A stretch of DNA of 64,000 bases from Octopus sinensis (Eukaryota), in NCBI RefSeq assembly GCF_006345805.1, contig NW_021837029.1:2938-66937 (forward strand), given 5' to 3'. A model generated the notes under the pieces. It was not told where the DNA came from and did no database searches. It was given only the letters and a program-made list of their open reading frames with translations. The translations under genes were made by a program, and so were the position numbers. Of the stretch, positions 17,240 through 63,736 are shown one piece after another (within the stretch, counting starts at the first letter, position 1; every line of letters begins with the position of its first letter).

Positions 17240-17303
<64 letters not shown>

Positions 17304-17312
17304 TTATCTATC
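17239..17312. repeat. (TATC)n array 5' of the Tx1-like element
   Basis: Direct inspection. Confidence 0.95.
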
Positions 17313-17530
17313 GGACAGACAGACGCAAGTCAAATGGGCTCCACGTAAATTGGTATTTTTATACGTTCAAAAGTGTATATTGACAAATATTTTGTGTTTA
17401 AAAGTTGTGCAACAACATCCACTGCAAACCTTTGATAAATATCTACACAAAATTTTGCCCCTTGTGGGCAAAATTTAAAAGAAAAATTCTCATAGCCTTC
17501 GTGGTTTCATTTAGCCATTTTATTTCCAAA

Positions 17531-19665
17531 ATGGCCACTGGTCACCACGAGGCTGAGGTGCAAGTCAAGCGTGACGCAGAGACAGAAAAACAGGATGCTC
17601 TGTTAGCATACGCTGAACCTGACAACAACCCACCACCTCCACCACCATCAACATCGACAACAGCAACAAATACAAAACAAAGGTCGCAAGGCCAAGCACC
17701 GTCAACACCATCAGTAAGTCCACCACCAACACCGACAACAACACCATGGCAGAATCTGCTACTAAAACTACTATCCCTACTAAAGACATCGCCACCAATA
17801 ACAATACCAACACCACCATCACCGCCACCAAAGACCGTGCCGTCAATGCTACTAATACTACTAACACCACCGCCGTCACCAAGAACGACAATAACAACAA
17901 CAACAACGACGACGACAACAACAATTCCCTTCAACCACTGCTCACTCCATCACCAACAAGTGAAAAAATAACGACGACAAGCAAACGAAATGCCGAAATT
18001 TGCGCTAATGCAGGACTAAATTACGCAGGCAATTTCCCACCCCTTGCTAGTTGCATAATCAGCAACCACAAACCTACAACCCACACCCCTGCCATCAACA
18101 CCAACACCACCGGCAGTAACAACAATAACAAAACAACAAACTTCGCCGAGGCGATAAAAGAAAAGGTAACAAAAGTTTCGTTTACTACACAACAGATTAA
18201 AGATTGCAGAAACCTTATTACAAATGAAAACGGAAAAATACTCTTACACATACCTCAGCACATATGAATGAGGAGAAAAAGACAATTGTATATAAAATCA
18301 CAAATAAAAAACTAAAAGTCCAGAAAAGGCAAGCACAGACAAAGTCGAAAAGTGCTTACGCCCCATCTGGGGATACAAGGATTGTGTGACTTGGGCGAAC
18401 AAGTTCGCACACGTACAGTGGTTTTTCAGAATGAAGAGTTGGCGAAGAAATTCTCAACGATAACCCTTCATTCTGATGAACTAACGTTGACACCGAGTTA
18501 CCTCGGCCAGAAGGTGACGAAAGTCATTATCAGTGGTGTCCCCCAAGTGACTACAACACTGTGGATAACATCCGCCTTAACATCCGAAATGGAGGACTTA
18601 AACATCCTAGATATCGGTGTTTCGGAAAACAAGGACTGGCTGGGAAAGAGAATAGAGTTCCTCTTCCACATAAGTCAAGAGGACATAAATAAAATCCCCA
18701 CCCACGTACATCTTGAGGATGGCCGCAAGTTATACGTAGTAGTCGAGGGCAGAAGGCCACGATGCTATACATGTGGCAGTGAGGCACACCTCAAAAGGAG
18801 TGCAAATCTGCCGCAAAATTACAACAACAACAACAGCCACAGGAAAAATCACAAAAGCCAGGATTATTGCCCACACCACAATATGGACAGCTAGTCAAGA
18901 AGCTGTATGCGGAAATGCAGGAAAAACAACAAAGAACAAGCCAAACCAACAAAACAACACCAACACCAGCGCCAAGAACAGAATCATCACCACCAACAAC
19001 AAATAAACCAATTCCAACACCAAGAATAACAACGAAGAAGACAAGCACCAAGGATGTAGGAGAGACAATAACCACAACAAACCCCCAGCAACACCCTCCC
19101 CGCGCACCACAACAATATCTACAACCGCACAAACACACCCAGACGCTTTACCCTTGCCCCCTGCTGATTCGTCAGACTTTTCATCTAACGATGAAAGTTC
19201 GACAGAATGGCAAATAGCCACAGGGGGTAAAAGAAAAAGATCAAGAAAAACCAAACAAGAAATCGCAACCAAAGCAGGGAGATACCTGAACCCTGAAAAC
19301 TCCATACACAAAAAACAAGCACCAACACCACAAAAACAATGCTATCAGCGATAGACACAAAAGACTCCAAACTAATGGAGTACATCACAGGATACACAAA
19401 CATTTGTGAAGATGACTTTAAAAATAGCAATCATCCACGCACTACACCACCCAAACACATCAAAATACTACACATCACAAAACAACACCACAAACTCAAA
19501 GCCCTCTTCCCAAATGCTGTAGGGGTTTCCAGAAATATCTGTCCCAAAAACTATATAGAAACCTCCTCGAAGACACATCAAAGAACGAGGAAGCCAAAAC
19601 TTTCGACACAAGTAAGTAACTCTCTGTACTTTCATTTGTGTGTTTTAAAGCACACACCCCAATAG
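17531..19665 (+). CDS. Tx1-like ORF1 (gag-like): low-complexity T/N/P N-terminus, RRM-like region, CCHC zinc knuckle; several frameshifts
   Basis: ATG at 17531 (MATGHHEAEVQ...); KVTKVIISGVP...LYVVVEGRRPRCYTCGSEAHLKR(EC) = C-X2-C-X4-H-X4-C with a frameshift before the last C; stop 4 nt before the ORF2 ATG. The exact C-terminal frame is uncertain. Confidence 0.75.
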
Positions 19666-19669
19666 AATC

Positions 19670-22600
19670 ATGGTCAAGATTGGTTGTGTGAATGCGCGTG
19701 GCTTGGGGTCTCCTTGGAAACAAGGATACCTCCTAAATGACATCAAGTCACATGATTTGGGAATCATAGCCATAAGTGAGACCAGACTCCACGAGCCACG
19801 GGCCCTAAAGTCCATGTTTGGCGGACAGTTTAACATTTATTTCGCTCCCTGTCTGCCGAGGATGGGCGGTAGTGGCACCGCGGTACGTTCTTTTTCACAA
19901 GAGCCTGGATCTCGAAGTCAAGACGATATTCGTAGACCCGGAGGGTAGACTGATCGTTCTGGATGTTGACGGCAGCAATGGGTGCGCTTTTCGACTCGTA
20001 TCAGTCTACGCACCGCCCTTAACAGGTCGGGCGGATTTCTTTCGACGTCTAGAAGTATTCTTGGGAACGTCTCGTCCTTTACTCTTAGTGGGGGATTGGA
20101 ATGCTACCTTGGACACGCATGTAGACTACGTGGGTAGAGACAGAACAGACAGGGGATGCAAATGCCTCAGAGACCTGCTCAGACGATTCCAACTGTCTGA
20201 CAGGTACCGACTCGACCACCCAAATGCACCAACGTGGACATGGAGCAACCGCAGTGGGTCGTCGAGATCGTATCTAGATAGGATACTGTGTAGGACAGTA
20301 GACAAGGATAACTTAGGATGTCCACAATTCCACACAGTCAGCTACACGGATCACAAATTGGTGACGTGTACGCTAGACTTAGATAAGGCACATAGACAGG
20401 GTCCTGGGTACTGGAAACTGAACGCATCATTCCCGTCCAGACAAGTTTTCAGAGACCGGATTAGCACACTAGTAAAGAGGGCTTTGACGGGAGCCATCAT
20501 CAACAACAAATGGTGGTTTGCCCTCAAGAGAGCAGTAAAAGCAGAAGCGATTAGGTACAGCAAAGCACTAGCCATAGATAGAAATAGAGTAGAGGGTGAG
20601 CTAGTTAAGAAGCTAGAAGAGGCAATTAGAAGCGGCATCGCATCCGACGTTTTGGCGGCGAGGTTGGCCCTCGACCAACACTTCAACGCCAAACACGAAG
20701 GATGTGCTGTCAGAGCTAGGATGCGTGCTCTAAGGAACGAAGGTGTTGGAGCCGCGAGAGAGGCCCGGGTGGCAGAGGCGCAACAGGGCAACAAAGCCAC
20801 CATTCGGTCACTGGTAGATGAACAGGGGCGCGAATTGCTCGAGCCAAGTAAAATGTGTGAGGCCTTTCAGCAGCATTTTGCCCGACTGTTCGGGACGAGT
20901 GGAGGGCAAGAACGTAGGGTAGACTTCAGTGCCTACCTACATAGCCTGCCACGACTCTCGACAAGAAAGGCAGGGTGCTGCGAAGGTGCCATCACGGCGG
21001 CGGAAGTGCGGGAAGCGATGGCAGAATGCTCGAGGGACAAATCACCGGGTTTGGATGGTCTACCCTACGAATTTTACTATTGTATGCCAGACTTGTTTGG
21101 AGACGTCTTGGCAGCGGTATACTGCAACTGGCAGCAAAACGGGAGCATACCCGGTTTTGTGAGTCGAGGAGCTGTAACTCTGCTGAAGAAAGATCCAAAC
21201 AAGGGAAACATTATAGATAACTTTAGGCCAATCACTCTGCTCAATGCAGACCTGAAAATTTTGACAAAGGTGTTAGCCAAGAGGTTGGCGCTTGTCATGG
21301 AGAAACTGGTCGACAACGCACAAACGTGCGCCGTGCCGGGCCGGAGCATCCATGACAACCTCCATCTGATGCGCTACATCATAGACAGGGTAGTTAACGA
21401 ACCTGGCATGGGTGGGGCCCTGATCAACTTGGATCAATCGAAAGCCTTTGATAGGGTAGACCATCGATACTTGGAGGCAGTCCTGAGAGCGGCTGGTTTC
21501 GGTCCCGTCTTCCGCGGCTGGATAGCTGGCTTGTACAGAGGCATCCGTTCGGTAATTCGCGTAAATGGACATCTATCGAGACCCTTCGACATTGCACGTT
21601 CGGTCCGTCAGGGATGCCCCCTCTCGGCGCTTCTATACGTATTGACTCTTGAGCCACTACTGCGGAAGCTGGCGACTCTGAGGGGCATCCCGCGAGAATT
21701 AGGATGCGGGACGAGCGTGTCTGCATACGCGGACGACGTCACCGTCATAGTGTCAAGCCACGAGCACATCGAGCGGGTCGGCGAGAGACACTGAAAGACT
21801 ACGAAGCGGTGACAGGAGCAAAAATCAACCGGGAAAAGTCAGTGGGCTTGCGGCTCGGCACCTGGAGAAGCAAGCCCATGCCGTCCACCAGTACCTCCGT
21901 CGTGGACGCTGGACAGACGGCCCGGTTGAGTTGCTCGGGGTCTGGTTCGGTCCGGACCTCCAAATGGAGAAGAACTGGAACGAGATAACGAGTAGGGTGG
22001 TCACTCTCGCCAGCAATGGGCCGAGAGGAAACTGTCCCTAAAAGGTCGGGCGGAGGTGGTGAACGCGTACATCGCGTCCATCATCTACTACCGCCTGACC
22101 GTCGTACCTTGTCCCGACCCTACCATCACCAAACTAGAACGCATCCTCTTCCGCTTCTTGTGGAAAGGATGCGTCCCGATGGTCAGGCGATCATTTGCTG
22201 TCAACACCCGTTAAAAGGAGGGCTGGGCATGCCGTGGTTGATGATGCGCAGACACGCGCTGAGACTGCGACATCTCCGGCTCTATGTAGACGACGGTGAA
22301 CAGGTGTGGTCGCCGTTTGTGAGGCACGCATTCCCGCAACTCGTCTCCATGACCGAACTACAGTCGTGGATCAAAAAGAGGCCGAAGAAGGGCGAATGGC
22401 ACCGCGAGTGTCGCGTTGCTCTCAAGCAACTCTGCCGTCCCGGGTCGACCTTGAGTGACTTCAACACAACCAAAGCATTCTATAGGGGATTAGTGGAGGG
22501 GAGGTACGACGACGAGCTCGGGGCAAACCTGGGCGTCGACGAGGAATACCTGACCCGCCTGTTTCAAACGACTTTCGGCCCGGGACCTATGGACAACTTC

Positions 22601-23108
22601 CAGAGATCCCTGGCCTGGCGGTGCTACCGAGAAGCGCTACCCGTTCGGGATAAGCTCTATAGGCATGGCTCGAGAAACACGGGGCCGACCTGCCCGAGAT
22701 GCGGGCAGAGCGACGAAACCGCTCTGCACGCAATCGTGCAGTGTCCAGCAATTTCCCACCTGTGGGCTTATGTCGAACGACTGCTGTCACGTGTGGGACG
22801 TGTCGGTTTATCAGCCGAGTCTATCGTTAATATCGTCACGCCTCCTTCCTTCAAACGGGAAGGAAGAGCTATTTTTATCATACTTGTGGCTATGGCGAAA
22901 GAATGTATCTGGTGGACGCGTCTGAAAGGATTAGAGACAAACACTTTCCTCTCTGGTCAATCTCTCATCAACTTCTTCAAGTATCACTTGAAGAAAAAAG
23001 TGAGAGTAGAGAGGCAAGTTTTGTCTAGTGAATGTTTTAAAAAAGATGGTGAATGTAGCAAGGATGGCACGTATGAATGACGAAGCCACCTTGACTATGA
23101 TTCTATGA
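19670..23108 (+). CDS. Tx1-like ORF2: APE endonuclease, reverse transcriptase and C-terminal zf-RVT (~1145 aa after frame repair)
   Basis: MVKIGCVNARGL, IAISETRL, LVGDWNA, SYLDRIL, TDHKLV, GYWKLN, KSPGLDGL, FRPITLLNADLKI, DQSKAFDRVDH, RQGCPLS, AYADDV, GGLGMP, CPRCGQSDETALHAIVQC. About six small indels; I saw no in-frame nonsense substitutions. Confidence 0.92.
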
Positions 23109-23505
23109 ACCGTAAAAATTAATACAGAGAGTTGCTTATTTGCAAAAAAAAAAAAAAAAAAGAAATATAACATGTGACTTCATTGACCGAGGTTACCGTG
23201 GTCTTTTCCGTAGGCTTTTCTTTCCACGGGTAAACCTCACCTGTCCTCCCCCTTACACTTCATATTGACATTTCTGTGATAACGATCCCTATTGATCAAT
23301 TTTTTTCCTCTCCCCCCTTTTTTTAACCCCCCCCTTTTTTTCGTCCTCTTTCTCTCCTTTTACGATCCCCTTTGATCGACGCCCCCCATTTTTTATTTAT
23401 TTATTTTTTTATTATTTTTATTTTTTATTTTTTTTACCTTCAAAAGAAAAGCTCTACCTTGTAATTTGTTCTATCTGTGTGCAGCCCTGTGTGGCTATAA
23501 AGAAA

Positions 23506-23536
23506 CATATCTATCTATCTATCTATCTATCTATCG

Positions 23537-23568
<32 letters not shown>

Positions 23569-23641
23569 CTATCTATCTATCATCTATCTATCTATATCTA
23601 TCTCTACTATCTATCTCTATCTATCTATCTATCTATATATT

Positions 23642-23697
<56 letters not shown>

Positions 23698-23733
23698 CTC
23701 TCTAGCTATCAAGGCTATCTATCTATCTATCTA

Positions 23734-23771
<38 letters not shown>

Positions 23772-23793
23772 CTATCTATCTATCTATCTATCG

Positions 23794-23825
<32 letters not shown>
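23506..23825. repeat. (TATC)n array 3' of the Tx1-like element
   Basis: Direct inspection; begins immediately after TAAAGAAA. Confidence 0.95.
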
Positions 23826-23828
<3 letters not shown>

Positions 23829-23896
23829 CTCTCTCTCTCTGAATCTACATGTGTGTATATATTCGTACCCCCCACACCCAACATGTATATAGATAG

Positions 23897-23928
<32 letters not shown>

Positions 23929-24503
23929 TTGTATGTATACCCTACGATGGAGCGGTGTCCAGTCAAAGTGGAGGATATATATGTTACAGAATCCGGAAAA
24001 TCAACCTGATGATATGATTATGACTCGAGAAGGACTTTTGATACTGTTTTTTTCCTTTTTTATTTTTGGTACGTGTATACAAATTACATCAGTTTTATTT
24101 GAGATGATTTGTATGAATTTCGCCAAAAGACGCTTAGCTCATTAAAGAAAAGCTTCTTCCTCCGCGAAATCGGGATAACTGCGGTCCATCTGAAAAACGA
24201 ACCCTGCAAGATGTGGTGGTTGTTGCAGTGATACAATCATGTCCACGGGGCGCGGCTGGACACGCCATTTTTTTCTTTTTGTTTTCTTGGTAATGTAGTT
24301 CTGGGGATTTTCTCGATAATATGAACTTTTTGTAATTTTTGTGTTTTTTTGTGTCTTTTCTTCCTGTGAAAATACGTTGCCAAATAGAAGTATTACAATT
24401 TAAAAAAAAAAAATTGTAAAGGTAACTTAAAATTTTGCTCTAAAAAAGAAATTAATTTATGCCAGTTAGTACAACTAATCGTGAAAATCCTATTATCACA
24501 CCT

Positions 24504-25088
24504 GTTTGTTTACTACCCACAAAGGGCTAAACATAGAGGGGACAAACAAGGACAGACAAACGGATTAAGTCGATTATATCGACCCCAATGCATAACTGGT
24601 ACTTATTTAATCGACCCCGAAAGGATGAAAGGCAAAGTCGACCTCGGCGGAATTTGAACTCAGAACGTAGCGGCAGACAAAATACCTATTTCTTTACTAC
24701 CCACAAGGGGCTAAACACAGAGGGGACAAACAAGGACAGACAAACGGATTAAGTCGATTATATCGACCCCAGTGCGTAACTGGTACTTAATTTATCTACC
24801 CCGAAAGGATAAAAGGCAAAGTGAACCTCGGCAGAATTTGAACTCAGAACGTAACGGCAGACGAAATACCTATTTCGTTACTACCCACAAGGGGCTAAAC
24901 ACAGAGAGGACAAACAAGGACAGACAACGGATTAAGTCGATTATATCAACCCCAGTGCGTAACTGGTCCTTAATTTATCGACCCCAAAAGGATGAAAGGT
25001 AAAATCGACCTCGGCGGAATTTGAACTCAGAACGTAGCGGCAGACGAAATACCGCTAAGAATTTCGCCCGGCGCGCTAACGATTCAGC
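24504..25088 (-). mobile_element. SINE family M, tail A: one head plus three tandem 184-bp units
   Basis: TACTACCCAC at 24511, 24695 and 24879 (period 184); head at ~25040-25088. Confidence 0.9.
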
Positions 25089-52800: not shown

Positions 52801-52962
52801 CAGGAGTGGCTGTGTGGTAAGTGGCTTGCTTACAAACTATATGGTTCCGGGTTCAGTCCAGTCCCACTGTGTGACACATTGGGCAAGTGTCTTTTACTAT
52901 AGCCTCGGGCCGACCAAAGCCTTGTGGGAGGATTTGGTAGACGGAAACTGAAAGAAGCCCGT

Positions 52963-53002
<40 letters not shown>

Positions 53003-53207
53003 GTGTGTGTGTGTGTGTACGTGTTTGTGTCTGTGTTTGTCCCCTCAACATCGCTTCACAACCGGTTCTGGTGTGTTTACGTACCCGGTAAAAGAGACCA
53101 ATAGAATAAGTACTAGGCTTACAGACAATAAGTCCCGGGGTCGAATAGCTCGATTGAAGGCAGTGCCCCAGTATGGCCGCAGTCAAATGATTGAAACAAG
53201 TAAAAGA
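52801..53207 (+). mobile_element. Composite SINE family C
   Basis: Both halves with internal (TA)n(TG)n. Confidence 0.85.
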
Positions 53208-53648
53208 ATATATGTGTGTATGTTTGGGCGTGTGTGTGTGTATACTTTATATGTGCGTTAACAAGGCAACCTATGGTTTCATGTGGAGGGGTCTTCACAA
53301 TTGTTTAAACGTGCAACATGACACACACAAACACACACACACATATATATGTATGTATGTATGTAGTGTTAGTGTAGGATGTATCAGGGAGTGATGACAA
53401 GAATACAAATCCAGTTGTCGGTCTGCACACACCAGAATCCTTAGAATGTATGGATGTACATTTTAGTTACGTAATATTACTGCAAAATGTGCATTGACTT
53501 TTCTTTACATGCCTCTGTGCGTGTGCTTGAGTATATGCATGTATATATGTATGTATGTATATACATATATATAAATATATGCATATATAAATATATGCGT
53601 AGGTGCAGATATATATATATATATATATTATATATATTATATATATAT

Positions 53649-55189: not shown

Positions 55190-56290
55190 TCGATTAGCAT
55201 CGATCACAACGTTCAGTTAGTACTATAAATCCCAGAAGGTAAGGGGCCGGAAGAAATGCTGCTAAGCATTTGGACCGATGCGCTAACGATTTTTCCAGCT
55301 CATTGCCCTAATTTCCGCCGAGGTCGACTTTGCTTTTCATCCTCTCGAGATCGATAAAATGAATCCAGTTGAGTACTGCTCTCAATTTAATCGGCTAGAC
55401 CCCTCCCCTCAAATCTCAGGCGTTGTGCTTATTGTAGAAAGGATTGTTATTGTTATCGTTTCTTCTATAGGCAGAAGGCCAGGAATTTGATGAGAGGGTG
55501 CTAGTCGATTACATCGACCCCAGTACTTAAGTGGTACTCAATGTATTTAAGGCGGCGAGCTGGCAGAAACGTTAGCACGCCGGGCGAAATGCGTAGCCGT
55601 ATTTCGTCTGTCGTTACGTTCTGAGTTCAAATTCCGCCGAGGTCGACTTTGCCTTTCATCCTTTCGGGGCCGATAAATTAAATACCAGTTGCGCACTGGG
55701 GTCGATGTAATCGACTTAATACCTATGTCTGTCCTTGTTTGTCCCTTCTATGTTTAGCCCCTTGTGGGTAATAAAGAAATAGGTACTCAATATATTGACT
55801 CCGAAAAGATGAAAGGCAAAGTCGTCCTTGGCCGAATTTGAACTCAAACGTAAACCCAGAAGAAATTTTGTGCAAAACTGTTGTTTCTAACAATCCCGAA
55901 AGGCTGAAAGACAAAGTGTCTTTCAAAGTGCGTCGGTGTCATTTGAATTCGGAACGTAAAGCCGGAAGATACAATGCTTAGCCGTATTTCATGTCTTCAC
56001 ATTCTGTGTTCAAATTTCATGGAGGTCGACTCTGCCTTTCATCATTTCGGTGTCGATGAAATAAGTACCAGTTGGCCTTGTACCAAAATTTGAAAAAGCG
56101 GCAACAAAGAGCTTAGCAGGATTTCGTCTGTCGTTGTGTTCTGGGCTCAAAATTCCGCCGAGGTCGATATTTCCTTTTATCCTTTCGGGCTCGATAAAAA
56201 TACATAACCTGCCAAGTTCTGTGTTCGATGGAATCGACTTCCACCTTTACTCACAGACTGCAACCTCGGTGCCAAAACTGAAACAATTAT
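55190..56290. mobile_element. Cluster of about six nested and tandem SINE family M copies
   Basis: Includes an intact tail-A copy at 55551-55781 (+) inside a minus-strand copy, with 15-bp TSD GGTACTCAAT(G/A)TATT at 55533-55547 and 55782-55796. Confidence 0.8.
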
Positions 56291-57028: not shown

Positions 57029-57816
57029 ATTATATATAGTATATATATATATATATATCATATAATATATATATATATAAACCTAAGTATGTATATGTGT
57101 GTATGTACGTGTATCTATCTATCTATCTATCTATCTATTCACACATTCTGCGCTCAATCCTAGATTTAATTTAATTAAATTTCAATTTGCATATAAATAT
57201 AAATTTAATTTAAATATATACAATGTTATATAGAATTAATTAATACTTATGATCAACGAGGCGTTACTAAAATATTTTATCCTATATTAATTATCAAATA
57301 ATCATCACCGAATGATTTAATTGTGCTATTAACTAAAATAAATCATTCTGTGACAACATAGGAAATACTGTACGAACAACAGTAATATGAGTTCAAATTC
57401 AGTCGAAAAAGCGCCTACTGATCCATTTGAGAGATACCTATACCTTTATTAGGAGATGTTGTTGTTTAACATGACGGTAACCCAAATAAAGGAGATACTA
57501 TGGTCAAAAACGTTACAGTTGTGACCATCCCATCTTCTATATAGACTTATGTTGAGTAATATCAATTGCATCGTGCTTTCAGCAGCGGATGATTTAAGGA
57601 AGACGTGATAATAATAAGCGGTAAATCGAACGGTTTTAGAAAGATCCTTGTATATTAACTTGTGGTAGGCCGTCTCTTCATTAATTGTTGGTACATATGT
57701 TGTAGTCACTTTACCTAACAGAACCCCACCACCAAAAAAAAACCAAAAAAATAACTGCCGAATATCTCCAAATCAAACCTCTGGAAAATTGGACAATTTA
57801 GTCCTGTTTAATATAT

Positions 57817-58040
57817 ATTTCTTTATTGCCCACAAGGGGCTAAACACAGAGGGGACAAACAAGGACAGACAAAGAGATTAAGTCGATTACATCGACCCCA
57901 GTGCGTAACTGGTACTTAATTTATCGACCCCGAAAGGATGAACGGCAAAGTTGACATCGGCGGAATTTGAACTCAGAACGTAGCGACAGACGAAATGCCG
58001 CTAAGCGTTTCGCCCGGCGCGCTAACGTTTCTGCCAGCTC
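57817..58040 (-). mobile_element. SINE family M, tail A, monomer with 16-bp TSD
   Basis: GTCCTGTTTAATATAT at 57801-57816 and 58041-58056. Confidence 0.92.
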
Positions 58041-58137
58041 GTCCTGTTTAATATATGTCTTCATTTGGAAGTATAGAGCGAGGCTAAGTGTAAATTATTT
58101 TGTGTGTAGATGTGAATGAATGTCTGGATATGTATAT

Positions 58138-59159: not shown

Positions 59160-59372
59160 TTTCTATTATGGGAACAAGGCCTGAAATTTGAAGAGAGAAT
59201 ACTTGTCGATTAAATCGACACCAATACTAAACTTGAACCTGTTTTAGAAACCTCGAATGGATGAAAGTGAAGTTGACCGCAACGAAAGTTGAACTCAAAA
59301 CGTTAAAGCTGAACGAAATGCTACTAAGCATTTTGTCTGGATTGCTAAGCTGTCAGCTCGCCGCCTTACTAA
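59160..59372 (-). mobile_element. SINE family M, tail B, diverged
   Basis: CAAGGCCTGAAATTT...TTGAACTCAAAACG...CAGCTCGCCGCC. Confidence 0.7.
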
Positions 59373-63500: not shown

Positions 63501-63506
63501 TAAATC

Positions 63507-63736
63507 TATTTCTTTACTGCCCATAAGGCGCTAAACACAGAGAGGACAAACATGGACAGACAAACGGATCAAGTCGATTACATCGCCCCCAGTGCGTAAC
63601 TGGTACTTAATTTATCGACCCCGAAAGGATGAAAGGCAAAGTCGACCTCGGCGGAATTTGAACTCAGAATGTAGCGGCAGACAAAATGTTGTTAAACATT
63701 TCGCCCGGCGTGCTAACGATTCTGCCAGCTCGCCGC
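63507..63736 (-). mobile_element. SINE family M, tail A, monomer
   Basis: Complete head-body-tail. Confidence 0.88.

What the first reader, a model, noticed from the sequence alone, without database searches (positions are those of the whole stretch)
23457..23505. The 3' end of the Tx1-like LINE matches the tail of an abundant SINE: a probable LINE-SINE partnership
Seen: the LINE ends CCTTGTAATTTGTTCTATCTGTGTGCAGCCCTGTGTGGCTATAAAGAAA. SINE-M tail A (7170-7225, 44133-44179, 55735-55781, 57817-57870 rc, 24511-24560 rc) ends CCTTGTTTGTCCCCTCTGTGTTTAGCCCCTTGTGGG(C/T)A(A/G)TAAAGAAA; my hand alignment gives about 38 matches in 50 columns. Both carry a 4-bp hairpin just before TAAAGAAA with different stem bases (AGCC-CTGTGT-GGCT versus GCCC-CTTGT-GGGC). 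SINE copies have 15-16-bp TSDs. Established: SINEs borrow 3' tails from partner LINEs that use stringent 3' recognition (L2, CR1, RTE), whereas L1-clade elements usually rely on poly(A). Inference: this Tx1 family, or a close relative, recognises a structured non-poly(A) 3' end and mobilises SINE-M tail A.
Basis: partly seen in the sequence, partly recalled or inferred. Interest (0 to 1): 0.78.

Follow-up and report, generated by a model that had tools for sequence, protein, structure and literature searches.

The report
Octopus LINE and SINE share tail
A broken L1/Tx1-type jumping gene in this octopus window ends in the same roughly 45-base hairpin-containing tail as an abundant short repeat (SINE), and related LINEs in Octopus and Argonauta carry even closer versions, so this LINE group is very probably what copies that SINE.

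Summary
The LINE (window 17313-23505) ends exactly as quoted. Its last 49 nt align to the SINE tail-A consensus with 38 matches in 50 columns. That local score is 38, against 14.5±2.5 for 5000 shuffles (maximum 28), and it is the best non-SINE match in the 64 kb.

The tail belongs to the LINE and is not a stray SINE fragment. Five further LINE 3' ends end in the same motif: two distinct copies in Argonauta hians plus a truncated fragment beside one of them, one in Octopus sinensis, and one from a Logan read assembly. Their ORF2 C-termini are 43-62% identical to the window's.

The O. sinensis copy (84-86%) and one Argonauta copy (80-82%) match the SINE better than the window copy does (77%). 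A sister lineage is therefore the likelier partner.

A 4-bp stem with a CTTGT loop is kept through compensatory changes (C-G, G-C, A-U). No element has a poly(A) tail. LINE and SINE insertions share 11-18-bp target duplications and mostly TAT-starting 3' junctions.

ORF2 is L1-like (APE, RT, zf-RVT; the best solved relative is human L1 ORF2p). The Tx1 assignment rests on elimination, not on a phylogeny. Mobilisation is inferred, not shown.

This is a new member of the known class of stringent LINE/SINE pairs. I found no description of it in the searchable literature.

The parts
17313..23505 (+). Defective full-length-like L1/Tx1-type LINE copy
   Evidence: It is bounded by (CTAT)n on the left and CA(TATC)n on the right. 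ORF1- and ORF2-like reading frames are present. The only match to it elsewhere in the window is a 36-bp stretch (46612-46646).
17531..19217 (+). ORF1 region, broken across several frames, with a degenerate CCHC-like knuckle (CYTCGSEAH)
   Evidence: The ORF list gives the frames. Pfam found no family. The knuckle was read by eye.
19670..23080 (+). ORF2 with APE endonuclease, reverse transcriptase and a C-terminal zf-RVT zinc-binding domain. It is inactivated by frame-3 stops at 21792, 21810, 21927 and 21993, by a frameshift near 22193, and by a frame change near 19880-19950.
   Evidence: Pfam hits: Exo_endo_phos 7.9e-8, RVT_1 3.4e-27, zf-RVT 3.5e-8. tblastn with relatives maps the frames. The best solved relative is human L1 ORF2p at 2e-38.
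23081..23505 (+). LINE 3' UTR, rich in T and C runs, with no poly(A)
   Evidence: Read directly from the sequence. It is homologous to the 3' UTR of the closest relative, L004 (81% amino-acid identity), up to window 23471, where the L004 contig ends.
23457..23505 (+). The LINE 3' tail shared with SINE tail A (the finding)
   Evidence: 38 of 50 columns match the SINE consensus. Score 38 against a null of 14.5±2.5.
23483..23496 (+). Tail hairpin: AGCC / loop CTGTGT / GGCT, followed by the terminal TAAAGAAA at 23498-23505
   Evidence: Coordinates. The MFE fold contains this stem. The homologous stem in relatives shows covariation.
17240..17312 (.). (CTAT)n microsatellite on the LINE's 5' side
   Evidence: Tandem Repeats Finder and the sequence.
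23508..23840 (.). (TATC)n microsatellite on the LINE's 3' side. It is the same repeat as on the 5' side, so the LINE sits inside one microsatellite.
   Evidence: Tandem Repeats Finder and the sequence.
6998..7400 (+). SINE with tail A: a full unit 6998-7228 followed by a second unit covering SINE positions 47-229
   Evidence: blastn and the sequence.
24501..25090 (-). SINE tail-A array: one near-full unit followed by two units of SINE positions 47-231 (period 184)
43953..44213 (+). SINE with tail A (43953-44183) followed by 31 bp of a second unit
55553..55783 (+). SINE with tail A, flanked by the 15-bp target-site duplication GGTACTCAAT(G/A)TATT
57816..58041 (-). 5'-truncated SINE with tail A, flanked by a 16-18-bp target-site duplication containing ATATATTAAACAGGAC
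63506..63735 (-). SINE with tail A

Best explanation
The window holds a dead copy of an L1-superfamily, Tx1-like LINE. Its RNA ends without poly(A), in a tail of about 45-55 nt. The tail has three parts: a T/C/G-rich leader (…TCTNTGT…), a 4-bp G+C-rich stem closed by a CUUGU-type loop, and the terminal (A/U)AUAAAGAAAU.

This tail is the conserved 3' terminus of a whole LINE clade in octopods. The abundant SINE acquired a copy of it from a member of that clade. That donor was closer to the O. sinensis copy (L008) and one A. hians copy (L007) than to the window copy.

My inference is that the ORF2 protein binds the stem-loop and terminal motif of its own RNA ('stringent' recognition). It then starts target-primed reverse transcription at the exact RNA end, at a nick made at sites that mostly begin with TAT. 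SINE RNA carrying the same tail is copied in trans.

Shown: tail homology, the shared terminus, conservation across LINE lineages, compensatory stem changes, absence of poly(A), and similar insertion junctions. Inferred: protein-RNA recognition, trans-mobilisation, and the LINE-to-SINE direction of transfer.
For: (1) The window LINE tail matches SINE tail A with score 38 against a null of 14.5±2.5 (0 of 5000 shuffles reach it). It is the best non-SINE hit in the window.

(2) Independent LINE copies whose ORF2 C-termini are 43-62% identical to the window's end in the same motif, 220-270 nt after the stop codon where the end is held. They are:
- L008, O. sinensis: …TGTCCCCCTCTATGTTTGGGCCCTTGTGGCTAATAAAGAAAT
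- L007, A. hians: …CGTCCCCTCTATGTTTTTGCCCTTGTGGCTAATAAAAGAAATA
- L010a and L010b, A. hians
- L011-L014, Logan read assemblies
L008 scores 55 and L007 scores 49 against the SINE tail, with 0 of 5000 shuffles reaching either. blastn gives 87% over 46 nt for L008.

(3) The 3' UTR of the closest relative, L004 (81% amino-acid identity), runs without a break into the tail start at window 23442-23471.

(4) In L008 a periodic host motif resumes directly after …AAAGAAAT, which fixes the LINE terminus.

(5) The SINE tail is 77% identical to the window LINE, 84-86% to L008 and 80-82% to L007. LINE tails are 70-89% identical to each other.

(6) In the stem, 90.8% of cells are paired, against 18-51% when the 3' partner is slid. 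One pair is CG in 8 sequences, GC in 7 and AU in 1. RNAalifold predicts the same 4 pairs.

(7) A. hians has SINEs with a core resembling the Octopus SINE's. Their tail A carries the LINE-type stem GGCC/GGCT, and they have 12-17-bp target-site duplications.

(8) The 3' junctions of both LINE and SINE copies mostly start with TAT(T/A).

(9) ORF2 has the L1 architecture and its best solved relative is L1 ORF2p. L1-Tx1 is the only L1-type group reported in Octopus vulgaris, with 13 recently active families (PMC13282606).
Against: - The window copy itself is only 77% identical to the SINE tail and is defective, so it is not the source.
- Only six LINE 3' ends could be examined, and they come from four or more species.
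- The CG/GC covariation amounts to about two or three independent events, because all Octopus SINE copies inherit a single change. The stem is only 4 bp, and single-sequence folds are no more stable than shuffles for four of the five tails (z from -0.13 to +0.49).
- The outer helix shows only one-sided changes.
- Tx1 membership was not tested by phylogeny.
- Other LINE clades abundant in octopus (RTE, CR1, Dong-R4) could not be searched for the same tail outside this window.
- There is no experimental evidence of mobilisation.
- The SINE head gave no tRNA hit.
Confidence: 0.75

Rival explanations
1. The similarity is chance resemblance between two T/G/C-rich, low-complexity ends.
For: The 5' half of the SINE tail (GTTTGTCTGTCCTTGTTTGTCCCC) also gives scores of 28-33 against an unrelated repeat and against other TG-rich stretches in the window.
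Against: - No dinucleotide shuffle out of 5000 reaches the observed score.
- The match ends at the 3' terminus of both elements.
- Five other LINE 3' ends found through their protein, not their tail, end in the same motif, and two of them match better.
Confidence: 0.02
2. The tail is not part of the LINE. A tiny, old, 5'-truncated SINE fragment happens to lie next to the true LINE end in the T-rich stretch near 23440.
For: The tail is 77% identical to the SINE, whereas SINE copies are 86-92% identical to each other. A T-rich run precedes it.
Against: - The same arrangement recurs in six LINE copies from at least four lineages.
- The tail sequence differs from LINE copy to LINE copy: for example, L010a has loop AGGT and L011 has stem AACC/GGTT.
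- The L004 3' UTR is collinear across the supposed junction.
- No SINE body lies upstream of any of the LINE tails.
Confidence: 0.03
3. The tail is shared, but the enzyme that moves the SINE belongs to another LINE clade (RTE, CR1 or L2) carrying a closer copy of the tail. On this view the Tx1-like LINEs are fellow users of the tail, or acquired it secondarily.
For: RTE, CR1 and Dong-R4 are the most active LINEs reported in octopus (PMC13282606; PMC9115989). Tail exchange among SINEs and LINEs is documented (PMC5786205). I could not scan whole genomes.
Against: - A profile of the tail finds no carrier in the window or in 17 fetched loci other than these LINEs, SINEs and short unclassified elements.
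- The tail is conserved across deeply diverged members of this one clade (43-62% amino-acid identity), as expected for a cis-required element.
- LINE and SINE junctions share the TAT-start preference.
Confidence: 0.1
4. The transfer ran the other way. An ancestral LINE of this clade captured its 3' end from the SINE, for example by template switching, and kept it.
For: Template switching onto other RNAs is known for L1-type enzymes (PMC4494074). Both LINE and SINE versions of the tail are old, being present in Octopus and Argonauta.
Against: The same SINE body occurs with at least three different tails (A, B1, B2), whereas all six LINE 3' ends that could be read to their end, whatever their lineage, carry the A-type tail. 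That pattern fits the SINE being the borrower. This rival would not change the functional partnership.
Confidence: 0.08

Closest known systems
UnaL2 / UnaSINE1 of eel, and zebrafish ZfL2 (L2 clade; stringent type; Kajikawa & Okada 2002; PMC4176376)
   Same: The LINE and SINE share a 3' tail that ends at the same nucleotide. The tail contains a short conserved stem-loop whose loop sequence is conserved while the stem varies. There is no poly(A). The LINE's ORF2 protein recognises the tail RNA.
   Different: The LINE clade differs: L2 there, L1/Tx1-like here. UnaL2 ends in short tandem repeats used for template slippage, whereas these elements end in a fixed AAUAAAGAAAU. Nothing has been shown experimentally for the octopus pair.
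Stringent L1-clade LINEs of maize and sorghum with their SINEs, and Chlamydomonas L1-1_CR / SINEX-3_CR (Ohshima 2012, PMC3472496)
   Same: L1-clade LINEs have a conserved 3' end of about 45-50 nt that forms a hairpin with compensatory mutations and is shared with SINEs.
   Different: Those are plant and algal lineages, and at least the algal pair ends in poly(A) after the conserved part. The octopod tail has no poly(A), and the LINE is an animal Tx1-like lineage.
Tx1-Mar LINEs and SINEU of crocodilians (Kojima 2015, PMC4494074)
   Same: A Tx1-group LINE is inferred to mobilise a SINE, partly from a shared target-site preference.
   Different: SINEU has poly(A) tails. The link there rests on a shared target (the Mariner-N4_AMi transposon) and on shared snRNA-derived 5' heads, not on a shared structured 3' tail.
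Microsatellite-specific Tx1-group LINEs: Kibi in (TC)n, Koshi in (TTC)n, and crocodilian Tx1 families in (TTCC)n or (TTTC)n (Kojima & Fujiwara 2004, cited in PMC4494074)
   Same: The window LINE lies inside a single (TATC)n microsatellite.
   Different: Only this one copy sits in a microsatellite. Relatives and SINE copies lie in ordinary A/T-rich sites that begin with TAT. This looks like a short nick-site preference rather than strict microsatellite specificity.

Membership tests
Stringent-type LINE/SINE partnership (shared 3' tail) | The SINE 3' end is homologous to the LINE 3' end and ends at the same terminus | tested here: met
   The window LINE matches 38 of 50 columns. L008 is 84-86% identical and L007 80-82%. 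All end in …AAAGAAAT.
Stringent-type LINE/SINE partnership (shared 3' tail) | The tail is conserved among diverged members of the LINE lineage | tested here: met
   Six LINE 3' ends carry it. They come from Octopus, Argonauta and an unnamed Logan sample, and their ORF2 C-termini are 43-62% identical to the window's.
Stringent-type LINE/SINE partnership (shared 3' tail) | A conserved stem-loop supported by compensatory changes | tested here: met
   The stem is 4 bp and 90.8% of cells are paired. Two pairs show two-sided changes (CG/GC/AU). The CTTGT loop is nearly invariant. The support is modest: the stem is short and the independent events are few.
Stringent-type LINE/SINE partnership (shared 3' tail) | No dependence on a poly(A) tail | tested here: met
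   No LINE or SINE copy examined has poly(A) after the terminus. The flanks begin directly with target sequence.
Stringent-type LINE/SINE partnership (shared 3' tail) | The LINE protein mobilises tail-bearing RNA in trans | not testable with these tools
   This needs a retrotransposition assay.
Tx1 group of the L1 clade | ORF2 has an N-terminal APE endonuclease, an RT and a C-terminal zinc-binding motif, with an ORF1 upstream | tested here: met
   Pfam finds Exo_endo_phos, RVT_1 and zf-RVT. An ORF1-like frame lies upstream but has no Pfam hit.
Tx1 group of the L1 clade | The RT groups with Tx1 reference elements in a phylogeny (RTclass1-type test) | not testable with these tools
   No Tx1, L1, RTE or CR1 reference sequences were available. 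Indirect evidence: the only solved relatives spanning EN and RT are L1 ORF2p (2e-38, against 4e-20 for R2). One distant hit is named 'Transposon TX1…' by its source. L1-Tx1 is the only L1-type group reported in O. vulgaris.
Tx1 group of the L1 clade | Target-specific insertion (typical of the group but not universal) | tested here: inconclusive
   The window copy lies inside (TATC)n. Other copies do not lie in microsatellites, apart from (ATT)n after L007. The 3' junctions mostly start with TAT.
tRNA-derived SINE | Short, non-coding, multi-copy and flanked by target-site duplications | tested here: met
   The element is about 230 bp. The window has about 20 body matches. Target-site duplications are 11-18 bp.
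tRNA-derived SINE | The head is recognisably derived from a tRNA with A and B boxes | tested here: not met
   ARAGORN and Rfam found nothing, even when Rfam was run on one copy (55540-55800) at E-value 5. By eye only a B-box-like GAGTTCAAATTCC is visible. I therefore call it a SINE on structure and behaviour, and the origin of its head remains unproven.
Relaxed (poly(A)-dependent) L1-type mobilisation, as for Alu/L1 | The elements end in poly(A) or an A-rich tail | tested here: not met
   All copies end in …AAAGAAAT(A/C) with no A-run.

The most novel reading that the evidence does not exclude
A single L1/Tx1-like LINE clade, present across Octopoda, recognises a CUUGU-loop hairpin plus a fixed non-poly(A) terminus. 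It has driven the octopus-specific SINE expansion (SINEs make up about 11.6% of the O. vulgaris genome) through several tail variants. These would include not only tail A but also tails B1 and B2, which carry the same loop on different, compensated stems (TGGC/GCCA and AGGC/GCCT). This would be an animal example of ancestral 'stringent' RNA recognition within the L1 superfamily.
Probability: 0.3. Interest if true: 0.65.

Novelty: new member of a known kind. Interest (0 to 1): 0.5.

Why it matters
SINEs are among the largest components of octopus genomes: 11.6% in O. vulgaris, nearly all of it 'unclassified' (PMC13282606). Their expansion has been linked to cephalopod genome evolution, yet the papers I could search name no LINE partner.

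Identifying an L1/Tx1-like clade as the partner tells researchers which reverse transcriptase to look at for SINE activity. Published attention has gone mainly to an RTE element.

It also adds an animal case of stringent, hairpin-based 3' recognition within the L1 superfamily. That bears on Ohshima's proposal that poly(A) dependence in L1 is a derived relaxation.

Finally, it gives a compact motif to test: a 4-bp stem, a CUUGU loop and the terminal AAUAAAGAAAU.

Tried and rejected
- **Metagenome scans.** I made two scans to collect more LINE tails. One used a protein profile of the ORF2 C-terminus and one used a degenerate tail pattern. Both returned nothing, so that collection holds no octopod DNA.
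- **Short contigs.** L001, L005, L006, L015 and L016 stop before the LINE 3' end. L004 stops inside the tail.
- **L009.** It ends …CTCTTGTGGCCAATCAACACACA. Only the loop and 3' stem are recognisable, and it gives no significant score against the SINE tail. I did not count it as support.
- **Distant LINE relatives.** The 3' UTRs of L002 and L017 (38-47% identity, unknown organism) do not carry tail A.
- **SINE head.** ARAGORN and Rfam found no tRNA-like head.
- **ORF1.** Pfam found nothing.
- **Organism and clade names.** The listing of cluster members gave only one uninformative name ('exonuclease III') and no organism or clade names for the LINE relatives, so the Tx1 assignment could not be tightened.
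- **Literature sequence search.** Full-text searches for the SINE and tail sequences found no paper.
- **Fold stability.** Single-sequence folding of the tails is no more stable than shuffles, except for the Argonauta SINE (z = -2.8). I rely on covariation, not on energy.
- **Extended outer helix.** A helix pairing TCT with AGA and TGTT with AATA is compatible with the sequences (85.9% of cells paired), but it has no two-sided changes. I do not claim it.
- **MAFFT global alignment.** The alignment of the window and L004 3' UTRs misplaced the truncated end. A local alignment was used instead.

Full report
**What is in the window**

The window is octopod genomic DNA. Protein relatives of its LINE come from Octopus sinensis, O. 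bimaculoides and Argonauta hians.

Positions 17313-23505 (+) hold a LINE copy lying inside one microsatellite: (CTAT)n at 17240-17312 and (TATC)n at 23508-23840. Its ORF2 carries an APE endonuclease, a reverse transcriptase and a C-terminal zf-RVT zinc-binding domain. ORF2 is broken by four in-frame stops (21792-21993) and at least two frame changes. An ORF1-like frame starts at the ATG at 17531.

The 425-nt 3' UTR has no poly(A).

**The SINE**

A repeat of about 230 bp occurs some twenty times in the window. Nine units carry 'tail A'. The consensus is …CGTTTGTCTGTCCTTGTTTGTCCCCTCTGTGTTTAGCCCCTTGTGGGTAGTAAAGAAATA. Other copies have the same body with different tails, which I call B1 and B2.

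Two tail-A copies have clear target-site duplications of 15 and 16-18 bp, and a third has a weaker 11-bp one. ARAGORN and Rfam do not recognise the head as a tRNA. I therefore call it a SINE on its structure and behaviour only.

**Is the resemblance more than chance?**

In 5000 dinucleotide-preserving shuffles the mean is 14.5, the SD 2.5 and the maximum 28.
- In a scan of both strands of the whole window, the LINE end is the best hit outside SINE copies.
- The runners-up score 31-33. They belong to another repeat that shares only the TG/TC-rich leader.
- The match also ends at the 3' terminus of both elements.

**The tail belongs to the LINE clade**

I looked for relatives by protein, not by tail, and fetched their loci.

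| Locus | Source | Identity of ORF2 C-terminus to window | 3' end |
|---|---|---|---|
| L008 | O. sinensis chromosome | 43-45% | …TGTCCCCCTCTATGTTTGGGCCCTTGTGGCTAATAAAGAAAT, 233 nt after the stop codon |
| L007 | A. hians | 54-59% | …CGTCCCCTCTATGTTTTTGCCCTTGTGGCTAATAAAAGAAATA, then (ATT)n |
| L010a | A. hians | 62% | …TTCTGTGTCAGCCAGGTGGCTAAGAAAGAAAT |
| L010b | A. hians, 5'-truncated 3'-UTR fragment just downstream of L010a | not applicable | …TCTGTGTCGGCCCTTGTGGCTAATAAAGAAATC |
| L011-L014 | Logan read assemblies | 59% | …GTCTTTGTTTAACCCTTGTGGTTTGAATAAA, at the contig edge |

Further points:
- In L008 a periodic host motif resumes immediately after …AAAGAAAT, which fixes the LINE terminus.
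- The closest relative, L004 (81%), stops at a contig end. Its 3' UTR is collinear with window 23442-23471, so it runs across the start of the reported tail.
- No SINE body precedes any of these LINE tails.
- The tail is therefore the clade's own 3' end, not a neighbouring SINE scrap.

**Which LINE is the partner?**

Over the last 44 nt or so, the Octopus SINE consensus is 77% identical to the window LINE, 84-86% to L008 and 80-82% to L007. LINE tails are 70-89% identical to one another.

Against the SINE tail, L008 scores 55 and L007 scores 49, with 0 of 5000 shuffles reaching either.

The SINE tail thus nests within LINE-tail diversity. It is nearer to the L008/L007 type than to the window copy.

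A. hians also has SINEs whose core resembles the Octopus SINE's. Their tail A has the LINE-type stem, and they are flanked by 12-17-bp target duplications. If these are the same SINE lineage, the association predates the split of Argonauta and Octopus; that homology and dating are my inference.

**Structure**

All tails can form a 4-bp stem closed by CTTGT. The window LINE has a 6-nt loop, CTGTGT, and L010a has AGGT.

| Element | 5' stem / 3' stem |
|---|---|
| Window LINE, L010a | AGCC / GGCT |
| L008, L010b, Argonauta SINEs | GGCC / GGCT |
| L011 | AACC / GGTT |
| Octopus SINE | GCCC / GGGY |

On a 19-sequence alignment, 90.8% of cells pair, against 18-51% when the 3' partner is slid by 1-3 columns. 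One pair is CG in 8 sequences, GC in 7 and AU in 1. RNAalifold predicts the same four pairs on its own.

The limits of this evidence are real. The CG-to-GC switch is a single event inherited by all Octopus SINE copies, so there are only about two or three independent compensatory events. The hairpin is also too small for single-sequence energies to stand out.

An outer helix pairing TCT with AGA and TGTT with AATA is compatible with the data (85.9% of cells paired) but shows only one-sided changes. I do not claim it.

**Insertion signature**

None of the copies has poly(A). The flanks start directly after …GAAAT(A/C).

Most 3' junctions begin with TAT(T/A): TATTTC, TATTTT, TATTAA, TATTAT and TATATT in Argonauta SINE and LINE copies, and ATATAT, TATTTCG and (CA)TATC(TATC)n in the window.

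The shared junction type is weak evidence, because the numbers are small. It does agree with one endonuclease serving both LINE and SINE.

**Mechanism proposed**

Steps shown:
- a common, co-terminal, conserved tail;
- a compensated stem;
- no poly(A);
- similar junctions and target-duplication lengths.

Steps inferred:
- the ORF2 protein binds the stem-loop and terminal motif of its template;
- reverse transcription starts at the exact RNA end, on a nick at a TAT-type site;
- SINE RNA bearing the same tail is copied in trans;
- the SINE borrowed the tail from the LINE. The same SINE body carries at least three tails, whereas every LINE lineage examined has the A type.

**Comparison with what is known**

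Sharing of 3' tails between SINEs and stringent LINEs is textbook for L2, CR1 and RTE (Ohshima and Okada; PMC3747384).

Within the L1 clade, stringent pairs with compensated hairpins are described for maize and sorghum and for Chlamydomonas (PMC3472496).

For the Tx1 group, Kojima inferred that Tx1-Mar mobilises SINEU in crocodilians. That inference rests on a shared target and poly(A) tails, not on a shared structured tail. Tx1 families that insert into microsatellites are also known (PMC4494074).

Recent octopus repeat papers list 13 recently active L1-Tx1 families and about 900 'unclassified' SINE families. They make no partner analysis (PMC13282606; PMC8967140; PMC9115989). Text searches for the sequences themselves found nothing.

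I therefore rate this a new member of a known kind. Repbase entries, which I cannot read, may already note it.

**On 'Tx1-like'**

Domain architecture places the element in the L1 superfamily. So does the fact that the only solved relatives spanning the endonuclease, RT and C-terminal region are L1 ORF2p.

Assignment to Tx1 rather than L1 proper rests on three weaker points: elimination, since L1-Tx1 is the only L1-type group reported in octopus; one automatically named distant hit; and the microsatellite context. No phylogeny could be run, so this remains probable rather than shown.

**Limits**

- The metagenome collection contains no octopod DNA.
- Other LINE clades could be excluded only within the window and the fetched loci.
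- Nothing here is experimental.

Noticed in passing
window 17240-17312 and 23508-23840: The LINE sits inside a single (TATC)n/(CTAT)n microsatellite, with the repeat on both sides. Tx1-group LINEs that target microsatellites are known. Here it may simply reflect a TAT-start nick-site preference, since relatives are not in microsatellites.
   Followed up: partly
window 17453-17473, within 17313-17530 upstream of the ORF1 ATG at 17531: The LINE's 5' leader contains AAAATTTTGCCCCTTGTGGGCAAAATTTAAAAGAAAAA. This is a perfect GCCC/GGGC stem with the same CTTGT loop. It resembles SINE tail B1 (score 30; 4 of 3000 shuffles reach it). It could be a 5'-UTR element. It could also be the 3' end of another element joined by template switching or by insertion next to a tail.
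   Followed up: partly
window 5681-5832(-), 32609-32800, 38610-38840, 45961-46400, 55310-55430, 55973-56290, 59205-59363(-): The same SINE body occurs with other tails.
- B1: …CCCAAAATTGCTGGCCTTGTGCCAAAATTTAAAACCA
- B2: …CAAAATTTCAGGCCTTGTGCCTATAGTAGAAAGGA(TTA)n
Both keep the CTTGT loop on different, compensated stems (TGGC/GCCA and AGGC/GCCT). The 3' UTRs of the distant LINE relatives L002 and L017 (unknown organism) have a B-like motif. This suggests several tails come from one LINE group. No octopus LINE with a B tail was found.
   Followed up: partly
window 24501-25090(-), 6998-7400(+), 43953-44213(+): Tail-A SINEs form head-to-tail arrays with a 184-bp unit covering SINE positions 47-231. 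The junction is always the same: …AAAGAAATAGG|TATTTCGTC. SINE position 47 starts TATTTC, which is the preferred junction sequence. The arrays may therefore arise by SINEs inserting into SINEs at that site with homology-assisted 5' joining, or by template switching.
   Followed up: partly
window 26179-26710(-), 44264-44569(-), 45371-45566(-), 10638-10862(-): These are further degraded fragments of L1/Tx1-like ORF2, 28-45% identical to relatives by tblastn (apart from one 15-aa piece). None has a recognisable tail nearby.
   Followed up: no
window 13150-13450(+), 49850-50250(-), 52950-53250(+): A second abundant repeat is present. It contains …GGCATCTTGGGCAAGTGTCTTC…, which looks CORE-SINE-like by eye, and an internal GTTTGTGTGTCTGTGTTTGTCCCC that resembles the 5' leader of SINE tail A.
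   Followed up: no
window 32589-32607: An isolated tail-A end (TGTGGGCAATAAAGAAATA) is joined directly to a 5'-truncated SINE body that carries a B-type tail.
   Followed up: no
L007 4700-4860, 4915-5160 and 5690-5851; L010 5120-5150, 6120-6446(-) and 6735-6786(-): In two 7-kb Argonauta hians loci the tail-A motif occurs four or five times each. It ends SINEs, a short 150-nt element and LINE fragments, so it is very abundant in that genome too.
   Followed up: partly
protein P0089: A public protein labelled 'MAG: zinc-binding domain-containing protein [Herbaspirillum sp.]' is 60% identical to this octopod LINE's ORF2 C-terminus. The bacterial bin is probably contaminated with animal DNA.
   Followed up: no
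L002 and L003 (ENA ERZ25071366 ctg14421c): A related LINE (47% identity, unknown organism) occurs as direct tandem copies about 6.5 kb apart. A TGGC-CATGT-GCCA hairpin lies between the ORF2 stop and the next ORF1.
   Followed up: no
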